A stretch of 22,876 bases of DNA, taken from contig JAWQFM010000014.1 in NCBI GenBank assembly GCA_033442325.1, positions 1,398,605-1,421,480 of the forward strand. The letters are read 5' to 3'. Within the stretch, counting starts at the first letter, position 1. Every line of letters starts with the position of its first letter. Under the pieces are notes generated by a model. It saw only the letters and a program-made list of their open reading frames with translations, searched no databases and had not been told where the DNA came from. The stretch is from Salpingoeca rosetta (Eukaryota; Protista; Choanoflagellata). Below are positions 12,148 to 20,079 of this stretch, piece by piece. The translations under genes and the position numbers were made by a program.

Positions 12148-12963
12148 ATGGCTGGGATGATCGAGTCGCTATGCGGCTGGCGGCTTGCCGCCCGCATCTG
12201 TGGCGTGTTTGCAACACTCGGTGCGTGTGTGTGTGTGCTTGTGTGTATGTGTGTGTGTGTGTGCTTGTGTGTGTGTGTGTGCTTGTGTGTGTGTGTGTGT
12301 GTGCATGTGTGTGCGGATGCGTGAATGGATGTGGAGATGTGTATGCACCTCTTGCAACCGGGTGTGCTTGTGTTGCCTCTTTCTCTCTACCTCTCCCCTC
12401 ACACACACACACACACATACGCACACATACACACATATACATACACATGTCCCCACTCGCTCTCCCTCTCTCGCTGGTGCCGCAGTGCTGATGATTGGTG
12501 GCATCCTGACCATCATCTCGCTTAGCGCCATATGCTGGGTGGTTGGCATCTACATGCTGTGCTGCTCGTTTGTTGTTGGCGTGCTGGAGGTGCCGGTCAT
12601 CTGCCAGTGCATCGATTTTGCAAAACCTTGGACAACACGGGCGGAGAAAGTCCCTTCAGGATACAGAGCCCTCGCCTACATGCTGTACGTTGACCAACAG
12701 TATGTGGTTTTGTGTTCATGGGGGAGGGGGGAAGAGAAGAGTGCCTACAGCAATGATGTGACTGTTTGCTGCTAGGTTTGTTGAAGTTACTTGGTTTGCT
12801 TGCTTCGTCGTGTTTTAAATACTCACGCGCTCACACACACAACACGCTGCTGCAGGTTGTGTGTGTTTATGTTCTTCTGCCTTGGGGTGTCTTCGATTCT
12901 TGCGGGCCTGCTCACCTTTGGCACGGGATTCCTGTACTTCATGGACTGGCTCGGCCCTCCTGT

Positions 12964-13000
<37 letters not shown>

Positions 13001-13510
13001 GTAGAACTGTGCAACTGTTGGCAAGTGTACTCTTTGCCTCATGTTTTGGTCGTGGTTTGACGTCATTGCATGCGTGCACAAACGTTGCTCTTCTCACCCT
13101 TGAGTGCTTGTACCCATGTGTGTGTGTGTGCGTGCGGCTGCAGCGTGTTCGCAATGCCGTGCAAATGCAACTGCAAGAAGGGATTGCAGACGACGAAGAA
13201 AGTCTCATTGGGAGCACGGAGGAAGTCAAGGTGCGCAAGTGTGTATTGTGTGAATGTGGGTGTTTGCGTGAACGTGTATACATGTATATTATGTGTGTGT
13301 GTGAATATGAAAGCTCGCTCTCCTCGTCCTTCACGCGTTGCTCATCTGTGTAACCCCCCCCTCCCTCTCACAACACAAATATACAACACACAGGAGGGCC
13401 AGACTGGTGTTGGCTGGATGGACACGGTGACGGAGCAGGCGGGAAAGGCGGTGGCAAGAGCGGCAGTGTCAGAGATGCAATCACAATGGACCGGGCAGAG
13501 CACCAAGTGA
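12148..13510 (+). CDS. CACFD1: Calcium channel Flower homolog (CACFD1/fwe; TVP18 superfamily), ~193 aa, multi-pass membrane protein
   Basis: Exons 12148-12220, 12486-12684, 12856-12961, 13144-13230, 13394-13510 (TGA), all phases consistent. WRLAARICGVF...GIYMLCCSFVVGVLEVPVICQCIDFA...YRALAY...FGTGFLYFMDWLG matches Flower family motifs (LCEAPFCCQFIEFA; FATGVLYGLSALG). Confidence 0.88.
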
Positions 13511-13908: not shown

Positions 13909-14069
<161 letters not shown>

Positions 14070-14255
14070 TGTGCGACAGGCGACACACAGAAATGTACAT
14101 TCCTGGCAGGCAAAGAAAAGAAAGAAGCAAACGCAGACATGGCAAGAAGTCCTTCTTGCTTGCTCTTGTGCCTGGTGCCTGGTTGTGTTGGGTTGATGGT
14201 GGATGAACGAAGGGTTGAGTCTGTTGACCTACAACGAGCAACAACAGCAACAACA

Positions 14256-14544
14256 ATGGTGTGCTCGTGCACTGCTTTCACCCGCACTGCACGAGCAGTG
14301 ATGTGAGCGGTGTTGGCGAGACAGTACTGTGGAAAAGCGAGAGCAGGGCTCCCATTTATTTTCACGCGTCCACCCACACTGCGCTGATCGTTCCGCCTCC
14401 TCTCATTGCTTCCTTGTCTCCTTTCTTGCTTGGCTGTCTGTGCATGATGCTTTCCTCCACGCAGTCCGACACGCGTCTCAGTGGGCTGGCCAGGGCCGCA
14501 CGCGAGTCCGTTCGCGCACAGTCGCGCAGGAAGCGCGGCAAAGC

Positions 14545-14582
<38 letters not shown>

Positions 14583-15609
14583 TGTGCGTTTGTGTGCGTG
14601 TGTATGTGTGTGTGTGTGTCTCTCTCCCTCTGTGTGCCTGTGCTCGTTCGCTCCCCTCACGTCAGCCTCTGTGCTCGGCTCCCCCAATACGGCACAGTGG
14701 GCCGCTCTGGCTCGGCATGGACGCTGCAAGACATCAAAAAGGCGCTCCCACAGGACATGCAAAACCAGCACGTAAGGCGACCACTCTCGTCCCTGCGTGT
14801 TTGTGGTTGTGGATGTATGCGTGTCTGTCTGTACCTGCACCCGTGTACATGCTTTTCTTTTCGGCTTGCCATTCATGCACTCAGCCCACGCGTTTTTTTA
14901 CATGTGCCATGCATAGGTGGAGCGTGCAGGGCCATGGGAGTTTGATCCAAAGAAGCTCAAGAACTTGAAGCCCGTTGGTTCCGGCAACTTTGGCAAGGTG
15001 CGCGTGCCTACGTGCGCGTGCGTGTGCGTGTGGTGCCACCACCTCTGAAGGGCGCTGACTTTCGCTGTCGTGCGGTGAAGTAATAACAATAGTCATCCAT
15101 GTGCATGCGCGACTGCCCTCCCTTCTCTCCCCTCTGCATGCTGCAGGTGTACGTTGGAGTTGCGCACGGCATCCTCAAAGGCGAAAAGAAGACGCGGGTT
15201 GCTGTCAAGGTGAGACGGCCTGCAGTCTTCTGACGTGTAGGATGCACACACTTGACGTCGTGTCTCCTGTTGACGCTGCACATCGCACCGGGCACGTGCA
15301 CTTGGACATGCACACATAAACTCACATACACACACATTTGACCTTCATCGCACGTATCAACCCACGTACACACTTGCATGCGCACATACCACACACAACA
15401 CACCACTCGCCACCCACCACTCGCCGCTGTCGCGCACTCCAGACGCTGACGTCGAAAGGGTCGAAAGTTGAGCAGGAGTTCCTGCAGGAGGCCGGCATCA
15501 TGCAGAACATCGACGGGCCGCACCAGATTGTTCGCCTCCTCGGCGTCTGCACCAAGCGCAAGCCCATGTACATGTACGTCGCATGGAGCACCATGTGTGT
15601 GTGTGTGTG

Positions 15610-15640
<31 letters not shown>

Positions 15641-16283
15641 GTGTCTGTGTGTCTGTGTCTGTGTCTGTGTGCCTGTGTGTCTGTGTGTCTGTGTCTGTCT
15701 GCGTCTGTGTGTGCTAACTTGTGTGTGTGTGTGTAAATGTGTGTGCACCACCCACCCCCCTCCTGCCTCCCCTTACCGCCCTCCTGCCGTCACCTGCTGT
15801 CAATTGTCTCTTGTCTCCTGGTACACCAGGATCATGGAGTTCATGTCGCGTGGCGATCTCAAGGAAGTTCTCCGCCACAACCGCCCAAAGGTGTCGCCGC
15901 TGCTGTTGCTTTTGATGCTGCTGTTGCTGCTTATGCTGCTGTTGCTTTTGATGCTGCTTCTGTTGCTTCTGTTGCTGCTTATGCTGCTGTTGGTAACGAC
16001 ACGGCCGTGACGCTGAGGAATGCGTCATTCTCATGCACCCTTGAGCACGCACATGCACGTACACATATGCATACCCACACGCCCACACACGCGTTCACAG
16101 AAAGGGAAGCCGTCTGCGCTGAGTACGCAGCAGCTTGTGAAGATGGCGAGCGACGTGGCGGAGGGCATGGCGTATCTCGCAGCAGCGAAGATCGTGCACA
16201 GGTCCGCTGATTACGATGCAGCCGTGAGCCATGCCAGGATGGTGATGGACGAGGGTGTCACATGTGTATGTGTGTGTCTGTGT

Positions 16284-16327
<44 letters not shown>

Positions 16328-16710
16328 TTAGTTGTNNNNNNNNNNNNNNNNNNNNNNNNNNNNNNNNNNNNNNNNNNNNNNNNNNNNNNNNNNNNNNNNN
16401 NNNNNNNNNNNNNNNNNNNNNNNNNNNNNNNNNNNNNNNNNNNNNNNNNNNNNNNNNNNNNNNNNNNNNNNNNNNNNNNNNNNNNNNNNNNNNNNNNNNN
16501 NNNNNNNNNNNNNNNNNNNNNNNNNNNNNNNNNNNNNNNNNNNNNNNNNNNNNNNNNNNNNNNNNNNNNNNNNNNNNNNNNNNNNNNNNNNNNNNNNNNN
16601 NNNNNNNNNNNNNNNNNNNNNNNNNNNNNNNNNNNNNNNNNNNNNNNNNNNNNNNNNNNNNNNNNNNNNNNNNNNNNNNNNNNNNNNNNNNNNNNNNNNN
16701 NNNNNNNNNG

Positions 16711-16754
<44 letters not shown>

Positions 16755-17017
16755 GAGAGAGAAAACGCTGCGGTTATGCCCAATCTAATCTTGCTCTTCC
16801 TTTTCCATGCGCTAATTCATACACGTTACGTCACCTGCGTGTGTGCCAGGTACGATCTGATGCGCAAGTGCTGGATGGAGGAGCCGGAGGAGCGGTCCTC
16901 CTTCCCCGATCTCTACAACGCCCTCCTGGTGTGTAGTGTGCTCGCGACGGGTGCTGCTTTGCCTGCTGGCTGCTGCTGCAATCATACCTTCCAAGTGCAG
17001 CTGCCCTCATCGAACAA

Positions 17018-17056
<39 letters not shown>

Positions 17057-17619
17057 CGCACACACACATGTGCACTTGACACACCTGCCACGCCCCCTCC
17101 CTCCTCTTGGTGACAGGCGATGTGCGGACGCGTGCCAAAAGCGCCGATTGTTCGGTCTGACGACGACGAGCAGAAGGAGGTGATGGCGTCGACATACAGC
17201 ATCCCGCAGGACGCATTGCACACATACGACGCCGAGGACAGCGCCGAAGGTGCGCCCGTGGTGTTGCCTTGGTGTGTGTGTTGTCTTGTGGTGTGTGTGT
17301 GTGTGTCTGTCTGTCTGTCTGTCTGTGTGTGTGTGTGTCTGTGTCTGTGTGTGTGTGTGTGTCTGTGTCTGTGTATTTGTGTGTGTGTGTCTGTGTCTGT
17401 GTATTTGTGTGTGTGTGTGTGTGTCTGTGTATTTGTGTGTTGCTTCAACGCCGGGGAATTGCGTGTCCAGAGTGCCCACACTGTGCCTACATGTCTCATC
17501 GTGACCCCAACTGCCTTCAATCCCATGTGCACAGAGGAAGACGAGTACGACCCATACGGTCTCGCCTCCGTCGACCTCTCCGCTTACGGCCTCTGCGGTG
17601 AAGACCTCCCAACGTACGT

Positions 17620-17714
<95 letters not shown>

Positions 17715-17752
17715 CACGCACACACACTCGCACGCACACGCACACACACATG

Positions 17753-17797
<45 letters not shown>

Positions 17798-19122
17798 TCT
17801 CACCAATGTGTGCGTGTGTCCGCGTGACAGTGATGATGATGACGACGATGTGGACGAGGCCGCATATGTGCTGGCGACGGCACAGAACTCCACGCGATCA
17901 AAACCAGCCCAGCAGTCCACCGCCGCCACCAGCACACACGACGAAGGTGATGGTGATGATGATGACGACGTTGAAGATGAGGACGATCCCGTCGTGTACG
18001 CCACCGCTGATGGCGACATTGAGGTCAGCACCAGCACCTGGTGTCTTGGTGTATGTGTCTGTCTGTCTCTCTGTGTGTGTGTGTATGTGTCTGCCTGTGT
18101 CTGTGTCTGTGTCTTTCTGTCCGTCCGTCCGTCTGCGTGTATGTGTGTGTGCGCGCGCGTTATGTGAGCTGATAACTTACGCTGTGTGCCTGCATCACTG
18201 ATTGGCTGTCATTGGCGAATGTCGCTGCTGCTCCATCACCATCACACCTCCCGTTCGACGGCACGCGTGCGCATGCCCAGACCACAACACCGCCAACACC
18301 GCCGCCAGAAACGGCGACGAGTACAGCAACCAGCGCAAAGCCGAAAGCGACGCGCGGACTGACCGCTGAGGAGCGACAGGCCGAGGTGGCCGACTGGTAA
18401 GAAAACCAAAAGGAAGGGGGCGGGGGTTATTGTGGCGCTGACCTTCAAGGACGCAAAAAACATTCCTTCATGGTGCAAGACACCACCCATGTTCTCAACC
18501 ACTCACTCAACTCACTCCACAAAACAACCACATCAACACCACCAACCCCTCGCCTCTGCAAAGGATTGAGCGGGCGCTGGGCGAGAAGTGTGCGGAGGAG
18601 ACAATGCACTCGTGGCTGAAGAGCGGAGAGGTGCTATGCCGCCTCATGAACAAGATCAGCCCAGGCAGCATCCCAAAGTACGCAGCAGCAGTACATGTCC
18701 TGTTGCCTTTGTATTCTCTTGATGCTCTCGCTTGCTCTTGTTTGAACACTTTGTTGTTGTGATGGCGTTGATGAGAAGAGTGGAAGCCGTGCCCTTCCTG
18801 TTCCTCTGTTTCCGTTTCCCCGTTCCAACCACAACGAGTGCTCACCACCATCACCACCACCATTGGTTGCACGTCAGGTACAATGCTGGGACGACGCGCG
18901 CGTTCAAGCAGATGGAGAACATTGGCCGCTTCCTCGATGCCGTCACGCACTTTGGCGTGCCCTCCAGCGACAGGTGCGCACACAGCGCTTGTCTTCGTCG
19001 TCATGACGCTGGTGGTAGTCATGGTGATGGTGATGGTGGTAGTCATGGTGGTGATGGTGATGGTGCATGTGGAAGCTGTTGCTGGTCCCACGCACGCACA
19101 CACATACACACACACACGCACG

Positions 19123-19176
<54 letters not shown>

Positions 19177-19349
19177 ACACGCACACGCACACACACACAC
19201 ACACGCACACCGCACACACCGCACACACGCGCGCGCGCCAATGCAGGTTCATCACGAAGGATCTGTTTGAGGAGGACAACATGCGGCGGGTGGTGAACTG
19301 CATCGCACAGCTGCGCATTGTAGCGCAGAGCAAGGGCTTTACCGCCTAG
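14256..19349 (+). CDS. Protein tyrosine kinase (insulin-receptor-like N-lobe, no visible TM/SH2/SH3) with acidic Tyr-rich linker and C-terminal calponin-homology domain
   Basis: Exons: ATG 14256-14258 (start uncertain; in-frame ATG also at 14139), 14465-14549, 14698-14771, 14917-14997 ([21 protein letters not shown]), 15147-15209 ([21 protein letters not shown]), 15443-15573 (EFLQEAGIM...[10 protein letters not shown]), 15830-15890 ([11 protein letters not shown]), 16101-16201 ([17 protein letters not shown]), [N gap], 16850-16928 ([18 protein letters not shown]), 17117-17249, 17535-17613, 17831-18023, 18281-18396, 18564-18677 ([20 protein letters not shown]), 18878-18973 ([11 protein letters not shown]), 19247-19349 ([21 protein letters not shown]). 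Confidence 0.88.
16336..16709. other. Assembly gap (374 N) hiding kinase subdomains VIb-X
   Basis: N run flanked by (GT)n and (CA)n. The kinase reads ...IVHR before the gap and resumes at YDLMRKCW after it. Confidence 0.95.
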
Positions 19350-20079
19350 CCACGCATCCTGCCACCACCACCACCACCATGACCACCGCCACCCAGCAGC
19401 AGCAACTAAGGGGACGGACGCAACCACGCACGAGGCGACAGCTGGCTGGCGTCTTGTTATGAGTGTGTGTGTTTGTCGTTCACACCCTTCCCCTCCCCTT
19501 TTTTCCTCTGCTCCATTTCTCGCTCCTCACAAGCACAACTTACAATTCATGCCACCCTCTCGCCAAACGCATCAGCGACACCATCAAACCACATTCCCTC
19601 TTTCGTGCCTTGTCTCCTTTCCTTTCTCCCCCCCCCCTTTACCACCATCATCACCACCATCATCACCATCACCGTACCCAACGCAAGGTGTTTCTCGTTG
19701 GGGTTACATTACGTCTTGTTCGGCAGACTATGAGTGCTTCAGTTTACATTACACAATCATTCGTCAGTTACGTCTTCCATCATTACAACAGTTAAAACCA
19801 CGCGTCAAACCAAGCAGCACGTCTGTCACACATGCTGGGGACAGTCAAATTCCTGCATCCATCACAAGCACGCCCGCATGAAACACAGGCGCACCTGTCT
19901 GCATGCACGCAAGATGCACTGCATCGAAAAGGACAGTCAAATGATGCATCAATACAGGGAAAATAAAGACTACATATGCAACGAATGGTGGACGCAAAAC
20001 GTGCCGAGTCCAACAATGCAAGACAGGTACACAAGCAACAGCGACGACGACAGCATGCATGCATGGCACGGTGGAGGAG

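What the first reader, a model, noticed from the sequence alone, without database searches (positions are those of the whole stretch)
14256..19349. Tyrosine kinase fused to a C-terminal calponin/transgelin-type CH domain
Seen: a continuous phase-consistent exon chain runs from kinase subdomain XI (16850) through an acidic linker into a complete single CH domain (EVADWIERALG...[20 protein letters not shown]...[12 protein letters not shown]...FGVP...[18 protein letters not shown]), with no stop between. The kinase N-lobe resembles insulin/IGF receptor kinases ([21 protein letters not shown]; [14 protein letters not shown]), yet no TM, SH2 or SH3 is visible. I know of no animal tyrosine kinase with this architecture. 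Inference: a receptor-type kinase domain redeployed as a cytoskeleton-tethered cytoplasmic kinase (e.g. collar microvilli or contractility), a candidate undescribed phosphotyrosine-actin signalling module.
Basis: partly seen in the sequence, partly recalled or inferred. Interest (0 to 1): 0.8.

Follow-up and report, generated by a model that had tools for sequence, protein, structure and literature searches.

The report
Choanoflagellate tyrosine kinase with CH domain
This is a real, expressed Salpingoeca rosetta gene for a non-receptor, insulin-receptor-like tyrosine kinase with a calponin-type CH domain at its end; it is already annotated and belongs to a family found across choanoflagellates, but its function is untested and the public gene model lacks 108 residues because of an assembly gap.

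Summary
A + strand chain of 16 exons (start codon at 14139-14141, stop at 19349) encodes a tyrosine-kinase domain, a ~160-residue acidic, tyrosine-rich linker and one C-terminal calponin/transgelin-type CH domain.

The N gap is not a misjoin. Spliced RNA contigs from two studies run from the N-lobe exons through 324 letters absent from the window (108 codons, in frame) into subdomain XI, the linker, the CH domain and the 3'UTR. Raw stranded RNA reads support the junctions.

The organism is Salpingoeca rosetta. The gene is XP_004993951.1, "TK protein kinase". Its 503-aa model skips the gap and so lacks the catalytic and activation loops; the real protein should be 611 aa.

I found at least 25 kinase+CH proteins, in 14 named choanoflagellate species of both orders plus unnamed environmental sequences. 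One is a Monosiga ovata cDNA (BAG55493.1). They form two paralogue types. None came from animals.

The kinase is closest to InsR/IGF1R, and there is no transmembrane segment, SH2 or SH3. By genome position the gene is probably PTSG_05383, family CTKB in the published S. rosetta kinome.

So the architecture is catalogued, not undescribed. Actin tethering is plausible but unproven, because single type-3 CH domains do not reliably bind actin. Interest is modest.

The parts
14069..14141 (+). 5' exon (extends upstream of 14069 by an unknown amount); its last three bases, 14139-14141, are the start codon
   Evidence: RNA contigs X4 and X5 and 2 raw reads join 14140/1 to 14464/5. The gene model P0001 starts M-SDTRL. 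Two out-of-frame upstream ATGs lie at 14069 and 14093.
14142..14464 (+).
   Evidence: Joint 14140->14464 with a 1-base ambiguity; sequence read.
14465..14771 (+). Two exons (14465-14549, 14698-14771) for the N-terminal region, including a conserved basic helix motif (S-x-LA-x-x-A-x-x-S, then a K/R run)
   Evidence: The motif is conserved in the family. AF2 models it as a helix of low confidence in the orthologue.
14917..16201 (+). Five exons of the kinase N-lobe up to the start of the catalytic loop (14917-14997, 15147-15209, 15443-15573, 15830-15890, 16101-16201). They contain GSGNFGKV and VAVK, and end in IVH plus 2 bases of the Arg codon
   Evidence: profile positions 41-125. All junctions are seen in raw RNA reads and contigs.
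16336..16709 (.). Assembly gap (374 N). It hides 324 coding bases (108 codons: catalytic loop, DFG, activation loop, subdomains VIII-X) plus any introns
   Evidence: In X4 record 9 and X5 record 11 there are 402 letters between the pieces ending at 16201 and starting at 17116. That is 78 letters of exon 16850-16928 plus 324. The orthologue has 108 residues there.
16850..16928 (+). Exon for kinase subdomain XI (YDLMRKCW...)
   Evidence: profile 234-258; joints 16201->16850 and 16927->17116.
17117..18396 (+). Four linker exons (17117-17249, 17535-17613, 17831-18023, 18281-18396). The linker is 163 aa with 43 Asp/Glu, 9 Lys/Arg and 7 Tyr, including the conserved YS-x-PQD motif. The last exon also begins the CH domain
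   Evidence: Junction reads. The equivalent linker in the orthologue has pLDDT 32-39.
18564..19349 (+). Three exons of the single C-terminal type-3 CH domain (18564-18677, 18878-18973, 19247-19349), then the TAG stop
   Evidence: Pfam CH, 65.8 bits. Best solved relatives are calponin 1 (7e-20), calponin 2 and transgelin-2. Junctions 18395->18563 (11 reads) and 18677->18878 (22 reads).
19350..19600 (+). 3'UTR (continues at least 72 nt beyond 19600 in the RNA contigs)
   Evidence: X4 record 10 and X5 record 11 cover 19244-19600 and run on.

Best explanation
SHOWN. This is one S. rosetta gene (XP_004993951.1/EGD73670.1, on GL832966.1 at about 1.397 Mb), transcribed as one spliced mRNA of about 2.2 kb. 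It encodes a soluble protein of 611 aa: 503 in the public model plus 108 hidden by the gap. From N to C it has a short N-terminal basic helix motif, a tyrosine-kinase domain most similar to InsR/IGF1R, a disordered acidic tyrosine-rich linker of about 160 aa, and a calponin/transgelin-type CH domain at the very end. It belongs to a kinase+CH family present in both choanoflagellate orders, in two paralogue types; the window gene is the short type. INFERRED. The kinase is catalytically competent, because all 25 aligned relatives keep HRDLAARN, DFG, the YY pair of the InsR-type activation-loop motif and the (I/V)RWM motif. Like InsR, it is probably switched on by trans-autophosphorylation of the activation-loop tyrosines. 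The CH domain acts as a targeting or partner-binding module that places the kinase on a cytoskeletal or signalling partner; F-actin is the leading candidate but is not assured. The acidic linker tyrosines are likely autophosphorylation sites that could dock SH2/PTB proteins. [quoted passage not shown] The gene is probably PTSG_05383, family CTKB in the published kinome.
For: One mRNA: contigs from two studies cover every exon in order. The length of X5 record 11 (2189 nt) equals 29 nt of 5'UTR + 1836 nt of CDS + 323 nt of 3'UTR, within 1 nt. Raw reads give 2-22 junction reads per listed intron, and the first mate lies on the - strand, as expected for a + strand RNA. Depth per exonic base rises smoothly from 5' to 3', with no step at the CH exons. 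Identity and annotation. Domains. InsR-like kinase: the orthologue's kinase domain scores 295 bits to InsR against 246 to ROS and 239 to ALK. Per-domain scores to the family profile are 341-347 bits for InsR/IGF1R and about 270 for DDR2. Identity to vertebrate INSR is 48-49%. CH type. No TM: the highest 19-residue hydropathy is 1.44 or less, against 3.1-3.5 in INSR and DDR2. Family and conservation of catalytic motifs. Clade support is SH-aLRT 94, with two subclades that each hold Acanthoecida and Craspedida. Disordered linker and confident CH and kinase folds. CTKB: PTSG_05311 lies at 1,063,268 on supercont1.12 and our gene at 1,396,744. At 4.77 kb per gene that predicts about PTSG_05381. The only TK near that number in the kinome list is PTSG_05383 = CTKB, a non-receptor family with 2 members in each sequenced choanoflagellate.
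Against: The 324 hidden bases could not be read with these tools, so the S. rosetta catalytic residues are inferred from length, frame and orthologues only. No experiment or paper in the searchable library addresses function. A single type-3 CH domain is not a reliable actin binder (PMC7240100), and the protein has no calponin-like repeat. The CTKB assignment rests on a gene-density estimate, not an identifier match. No M. brevicollis kinase+CH protein and no second S. rosetta one appeared in my searches, although CTKB is said to have two members in each species.
Confidence: 0.65

Rival explanations
1. The CH domain is not an actin tether. It is either an intramolecular regulator (as I recall for Vav, where the CH region is reported to help autoinhibit the protein) or a docking site for a non-actin partner (calponin's CH binds ERK). 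The kinase would then act in soluble signalling complexes.
For: [quoted passage not shown] Weaker matches include IQGAP/Rng2, ARHGEF6/7 and Vav CH domains. There are no CLIK repeats.
Against: As I recall, IQGAP/Rng2-type single CH domains do bind F-actin, and transgelin-1 is reported to need its CH domain for fibre localisation. The 130-160-aa disordered linker suits a tether as well as a regulator. Nothing here tells the two apart.
Confidence: 0.3
2. Besides the full-length mRNA, an internal promoter yields a shorter transcript that encodes only the linker and CH, so part of the CH signal belongs to a separate product.
For: Junction read counts rise 3'-ward, from 2-14 in the kinase part to 10-22 in the linker/CH part. 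Depth per exonic base rises from about 5-13 to 15-28.
Against: The rise is gradual and continues into the 3'UTR (23-41), as ordinary 3' bias does. No cluster of read starts or loose ends marks an internal start (tables 6 and 7). Both assembled contigs are full length.
Confidence: 0.1
3. The kinase and CH parts are two neighbouring genes, or the N gap joins two different kinase loci (a misassembly).
For: None was found. The concern came only from the gap and from the 93 tyrosine-kinase genes in this genome.
Against: Spliced contigs from two studies and raw junction reads link every exon pair in frame. The Pfam positions are complementary across the gap. Twenty-five relatives from other sources, 14 of them from named species, have the same collinear architecture.
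Confidence: 0.02
4. The protein is a pseudokinase without a catalytic loop, as the 503-aa public model implies.
For: The model P0001 goes from IVHR straight to YDLM and matches only profile positions 3-126 of the kinase.
Against: The model simply skips the unsequenced gap. The transcripts carry 324 more bases there, and the closest orthologue (79% identical over the aligned kinase columns) has a complete catalytic core in those 108 positions.
Confidence: 0.03

Closest known systems
Choanoflagellate cytoplasmic tyrosine-kinase family CTKB (Fairclough et al. 2013 kinome, PMC4054682; the family name probably goes back to Manning et al. 2008, which I could not read)
   Same: It is a non-receptor TK family specific to choanoflagellates, with two members per species, which matches the two paralogue types I see. 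A listed member, PTSG_05383, sits at the expected gene number on the same supercontig.
   Different: Membership is inferred from position only. The held texts do not say what domains CTKB proteins carry.
BAG55493.1 'protein tyrosine kinase' of Monosiga ovata (sequence identical to a Mylnosiga fluctuans transcript), and the EukProt transcriptome proteins of 13 other choanoflagellate species
   Same: They share the kinase - disordered linker - C-terminal CH architecture and fall in one kinase clade.
   Different: BAG55493.1 is the long paralogue type, with an MG start and a weak N-terminal ankyrin match. The window gene is the short type.
Insulin receptor / IGF1R kinase domain
   Same: This is the highest-scoring solved and animal relative of the kinase domain (48-49% identity). 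Relatives keep the activation-loop YY pair (the first Tyr of Y-x-x-x-YY in at least 90% of them), and there is no kinase insert.
   Different: There is no ectodomain, transmembrane segment or juxtamembrane NPEY, and a CH domain follows instead of the receptor tail. The tree does not show them as sisters.
Calponin / transgelin (SM22) type-3 CH domain
   Same: These are the best sequence matches of the CH domain (calponin 1, 7e-20), which is a single CH with the same helical fold.
   Different: It has no calponin-like (CLIK) repeats or other actin-binding sites of calponin, and it is fused to a kinase.
[quoted passage not shown]
   Same: Functional analogy: a cytoplasmic tyrosine kinase with a long disordered region and a C-terminal cytoskeleton-related module.
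   Different: Abl's FABD is not a CH domain (as I recall, a helical bundle). Abl has N-terminal SH3-SH2 and belongs to a different kinase subgroup.

Membership tests
Protein tyrosine kinase (TK group; Pfam PF07714) | Glycine-rich loop GxGxFGxV and the VAVK lysine | tested here: met
   GSGNFGKV and VAVK are encoded in exons 14917-14997 and 15147-15209. PF07714 scores 129.6 bits against a cut-off of 23.1.
Protein tyrosine kinase (TK group; Pfam PF07714) | TK-specific catalytic loop HRDLAARN, DFG, and the P-(I/V)-RWM-x-PE motif | tested here: inconclusive
   Only IVH plus 2 bases of the Arg codon are in the window; the rest lies in the N gap. RNA contigs hold 324 in-frame bases there, but their letters are not shown. 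H, R, D, L, A, R and N of the catalytic loop, DFG, YYRM and RWM are invariant in 25 relatives.
Insulin receptor family | Kinase domain closest to InsR/IGF1R, with the Y-x-x-x-YY activation loop | tested here: met
   for similarity. The activation loop was seen in orthologues only.
Insulin receptor family | Receptor architecture: L domains, furin-like region, FnIII repeats and a transmembrane segment | tested here: not met
   Pfam finds only kinase and CH. No hydrophobic segment is present. An unrelated upstream gene ends at 13510.
Insulin receptor family | Groups with InsR in a kinase-domain tree | tested here: inconclusive
   The InsR clade (97) and the kinase+CH clade (94) sit in an unresolved fork with DDR2 and others. 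The search was quick and the sample small.
Calponin / transgelin family | Single type-3 CH domain | tested here: met
   PF00307 scores 65.8 bits against a cut-off of 26. The top PDB matches are calponin 1/2 and transgelin-2.
Calponin / transgelin family | C-terminal calponin-like (CLIK) repeat(s) after the CH domain | tested here: not met
   Pfam reports no such match for this protein or 8 relatives. The protein ends about 10 residues after the CH domain.
Choanoflagellate CTKB family | Listed under that family in the curated S. rosetta kinome | tested here: inconclusive
   The position estimate gives about PTSG_05381, and PTSG_05383 is the only TK nearby and is CTKB. No identifier or sequence match could be made.
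Choanoflagellate CTKB family | Cytoplasmic (no signal peptide or TM), absent from Metazoa | tested here: met
   for TM. No metazoan kinase+CH protein is among the hits, though these searches have limited sensitivity.
Abl-type actin-binding tyrosine kinase | SH3-SH2-kinase core with a C-terminal FABD | tested here: not met
   Pfam found no SH3, SH2 or FABD match.

The most novel reading that the evidence does not exclude
The kinase+CH family is an ancient phosphotyrosine-cytoskeleton module found throughout choanoflagellates. The CH domain would anchor an InsR-like kinase on collar or filopodial actin, and the phosphorylated acidic linker would recruit SH2/PTB proteins. This would be a way of coupling tyrosine signalling to actin that animals lack or lost. 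It may also show what the InsR-type catalytic domain did before it was attached to a receptor.
Probability: 0.25. Interest if true: 0.55.

Novelty: already known. Interest (0 to 1): 0.3.

Why it matters
[quoted passage not shown] This gene is not a discovery: it is annotated, and its family is in the published kinome.

This check adds three usable points:
- The reference protein XP_004993951.1 is wrong. It lacks 108 residues of the catalytic core because of an assembly gap, so it looks like a dead kinase in any automated survey.
- The kinase+CH architecture is conserved in both choanoflagellate orders, in two paralogue types, so it probably dates to before the last common choanoflagellate ancestor.
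- Its catalytic domain is the one most like InsR/IGF1R among cytoplasmic kinases seen here.

S. rosetta can be gene-edited, so localisation and knock-out tests are feasible.

Tried and rejected
- **Single-exon searches.** Pfam on single exons worked. A phmmer search with one 44-aa linker exon returned only the gene's own model.
- **Literature.** Six full-text searches for kinase+CH, accession numbers, CTKB or Monosiga ovata PTKs found nothing relevant. Manning et al. 2008, Pincus et al. 2008 and King et al. 2008 are not held. I found no copy of Suga et al. 2008.
- **Matching the gene to a PTSG number.** Peptide strings, protein length and neighbouring gene numbers in the supplements of PMC4054682 all failed, because the files are cut or lack sequences. 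Only the positional estimate remains.
- **CH-only homologue search.** It had too few candidates to say anything about other phyla.
- **Second S. rosetta paralogue and M. brevicollis member.** Neither appeared. They may fall outside the length windows, be mis-modelled, or be absent.
- **Rejected readings.** Separate genes, misjoin and pseudokinase (see rivals). Also the idea that the top non-CH hits were close relatives: they score high only because they carry two kinase domains.
- **Earlier scan notes.** The Vav note nearby gave no usable identifier.
Full report
**What is in the sequence.** On the + strand, a chain of exons with canonical splice sites keeps a single reading frame from 14465 to the N gap and from 16850 to a TAG at 19347-19349.

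Translated exon by exon, Pfam places the pieces before the gap at positions 41-125 of the tyrosine-kinase profile. The first piece after the gap falls at positions 234-258. Two later pieces fall at positions 22-49 and 56-81 of the CH profile. The two flanks of the gap are therefore complementary, collinear parts of one kinase domain, on the same strand.

**The gap, tested first.** The sequencing-run index found about twenty runs of one organism. Several hold roughly the exonic third of the stretch, as spliced RNA would. I laid four runs on 14069-19600.
- Two assembled contigs from different studies (X4 record 9, 1830 nt; X5 record 11, 2189 nt) contain the exons in order, with every intron removed.
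- Between the piece ending at 16201 and the piece starting at 17116, both have 402 letters. That is 78 letters of exon 16850-16928 plus 324 letters that are not in the window.
- 324 is 108 codons. This is exactly what the reading frame requires: two bases of a codon end at 16201 and one base completes a codon at 16850.
- It is also exactly the number of residues the closest orthologue has at that place.
- The length of the X5 contig equals 29 nt of 5'UTR + 1836 nt of coding sequence + 323 nt of 3'UTR to within one base, so no further exons are hidden.
- Raw stranded RNA reads (X21) give 2-22 reads for each listed junction. Almost all first mates lie on the - strand, as expected for a + strand RNA.

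The gap is a hole in the assembly, not a misjoin.

**Start of the gene.** The RNA data show a 5' exon that ends at 14141 with an ATG, followed by a GC-AG intron up to 14464. An unrelated small membrane-protein gene (Pfam Cg6151-P) ends at 13510, so there is no room for an ectodomain or a transmembrane exon upstream.

**One transcript or two?** Normalised to exonic bases, raw-read depth is about 5-13 in the kinase exons, 11-18 in the linker, 15-28 in the CH exons and 23-41 in the 3'UTR. The inflated acidic exon 17831-18023 is left out, because it collects reads from other loci. This is a smooth 3' bias without a step, and no cluster of read starts marks an internal promoter. An additional short isoform cannot be excluded, but nothing calls for one.

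**Identity.** A search with one 44-residue linker exon returned a single protein. It is XP_004993951.1 / EGD73670.1 / F2UA95, "TK protein kinase" of Salpingoeca rosetta, 503 aa, on GL832966.1 at 1,396,744-1,401,954.

The model uses the same exons as mine but splices 16201 directly to 16850. It therefore lacks the catalytic loop, DFG, the activation loop and subdomains VIII-X. Pfam sees only positions 3-126 of the kinase, plus the CH domain at 65.8 bits. The true product should be 611 aa.

**Family.** Searches with the model and then with a family alignment found at least 25 full-length or nearly full-length proteins carrying both PF07714 and PF00307.
- Named sources besides S. rosetta are Microstomoeca roanoka, Hartaetosiga balthica, Salpingoeca infusionum, S. 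helianthica, S. macrocollata, S. urceolata, Choanoeca perplexa, C. flexa, Mylnosiga fluctuans, and the acanthoecids Didymoeca costata and Diaphanoeca grandis. Unnamed environmental and transcriptome sequences add to these.
- One is BAG55493.1, "protein tyrosine kinase [Monosiga ovata]", a deposited cDNA identical to the Mylnosiga transcript.
- In 25 aligned members the catalytic-loop residues H, R, D, L, A, R and N, DFG, YYRM and RWM are invariant.
- In a quick maximum-likelihood tree of kinase domains, all kinase+CH proteins fall in one clade (SH-aLRT 94). Five shorter sequences that probably lack their C-termini fall in it too.
- The clade splits into a "short" group (about 500-680 aa; the window gene, 79% identical to M. 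roanoka over the aligned columns) and a "long" group (about 750-980 aa, MG start, weak ankyrin match).
- Each group holds both acanthoecids and craspedids. The fusion and the duplication therefore probably predate the last common ancestor of living choanoflagellates.
- No animal, filasterean or fungal kinase+CH protein appeared. The word-seeded searches are not exhaustive.

**Nature of the two domains.**
- Kinase: the orthologue's kinase domain scores 295 bits against InsR and IGF1R structures, clearly above ROS (246) and MuSK/ALK (about 240). Against the family profile, animal InsR/IGF1R domains score 341-347 bits, DDR2 about 270 and others lower. Identity to vertebrate INSR is 48-49%. The activation loop carries the InsR-type Y-x-x-x-YY motif: the YY pair is invariant and the first Tyr is kept in at least 90% of members. 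The tree, however, leaves the relation between the InsR clade and the kinase+CH clade unresolved.
- CH: the domain matches calponin 1 (7e-20), calponin 2 and transgelin-2 best, then Rng2/IQGAP, ARHGEF6/7 and Vav. That makes it type 3.
- Absent features: no calponin-like repeat, SH2, SH3, PH or transmembrane segment. The highest 19-residue hydropathy in any member is 1.44, against 3.1-3.5 for INSR and DDR2.
- Structure: an AlphaFold model of the M. roanoka orthologue has confident kinase and CH domains (pLDDT mostly 85-97), joined by a disordered segment at residues 355-482 with pLDDT 32-39.
- Linker: in S. rosetta it has 43 acidic and 9 basic residues and 7 tyrosines, most in acidic contexts. 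One lies in a YS-x-PQD motif that recurs in many members.

**How it most likely works.** The architecture and expression are shown. The following steps are inferred.
- The kinase is active and, like InsR-type kinases, is turned on by trans-autophosphorylation of the activation-loop tyrosines.
- The C-terminal CH domain localises it or binds a partner.
- The flexible acidic linker lets the catalytic domain reach substrates around the anchoring point, and once phosphorylated could recruit SH2/PTB proteins.
- F-actin is the obvious candidate anchor, and Abl with its C-terminal actin-binding domain is the nearest functional analogy. [quoted passage not shown]

I put actin tethering at roughly one in three to one in two, and a non-actin partner or an autoregulatory role at about 0.3.

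- The S. rosetta genome paper (PMC4054682) reports 93 tyrosine kinases annotated by hand, including the non-receptor, choanoflagellate-only families CTKA, CTKB, FYTK and HMTK. CTKB has two members in both sequenced species.
- Its kinome table lists PTSG_05383 and PTSG_05589 as CTKB.
- PTSG_05311 lies at 1,063,268 on the same 1,669-kb supercontig. At the genome's mean of 4.77 kb per gene, our locus at 1,396,744 predicts gene number about 05381. PTSG_05383 is the only TK within about fifty gene numbers. This is an inference; I could not match an identifier.
- Two members per species also fits the two paralogue types.
- I found no open paper that mentions the CH domain of these kinases or any experiment on them. 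The 2008 papers that most likely draw the architecture are not in the library.

**Verdict.** It is wrong on novelty and unproven on actin.

The useful by-products are the correction of the reference protein and the picture of a family present across choanoflagellates. Novelty: already known. Interest: about 0.3.

Noticed in passing
window 14139-14464: The first coding exon contributes only the ATG, and it is followed by a GC-AG intron rather than GT-AG. Two out-of-frame upstream ATGs (14069, 14093) lie in the 5' exon.
   Followed up: partly
window 17831-18023: The acidic GAT/GAC-rich exon collects reads and contig pieces from other loci. There are alternative joints 17848->17938/17943/17948 with foreign letters between them, and G>A at 17953 in about a quarter of reads. 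Depth there is inflated and should not be read as expression.
   Followed up: partly
window 14550-14619, 15594-15745, 16263-16325, 16711-16754, 17014-17068, 17272-17440, 17621-17750, 19089-19228: Most introns of this gene contain long (GT)n or (CA)n tracts, often GT-rich near the 5' splice site and CA-rich near the 3' splice site. These repeats are probably why the assembly broke at 16336-16709.
   Followed up: no
window 12148-13510 (+): The upstream neighbour is a small multi-pass membrane protein of 193 aa with Pfam Cg6151-P. It is a separate gene that ends about 630 bp before the kinase gene's 5' exon.
   Followed up: partly
proteins P0006, P0026, P0029, P0031 (alignment A3, columns ~140-200): Four long-type kinase+CH proteins share an extra conserved module of about 60 residues between the ankyrin-like start and the kinase. 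Two are from the acanthoecids Didymoeca and Diaphanoeca; two are unnamed. The module has no Pfam match at E<=0.01.
   Followed up: no
proteins P0005, P0007, P0008, P0025, P0027, P0028: Long-type paralogues begin with Met-Gly, and in some of them (P0007, P0008, P0025) residue 6 is Ser or Thr. That would allow N-myristoylation and membrane attachment. The short type, including the window gene, has no Gly2.
   Followed up: no
proteins P0032, P0039, P0042, P0048, P0050, P0051, P0053, P0056, P0060-P0063: Many high-scoring hits without a CH domain carry two tyrosine-kinase domains in one predicted chain. Several are from choanoflagellate transcriptomes, with SH2 and PH domains. Some may be real tandem kinases and others fused gene models.
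   Followed up: no
window 17565, 19486, 19498: The 2026 RNA reads differ from the assembly in a minority of reads: C>T in 4 of 18, C>G in 5 of 43, and a T insertion in 5 of 40. These could be strain or culture polymorphism, or errors.
   Followed up: no
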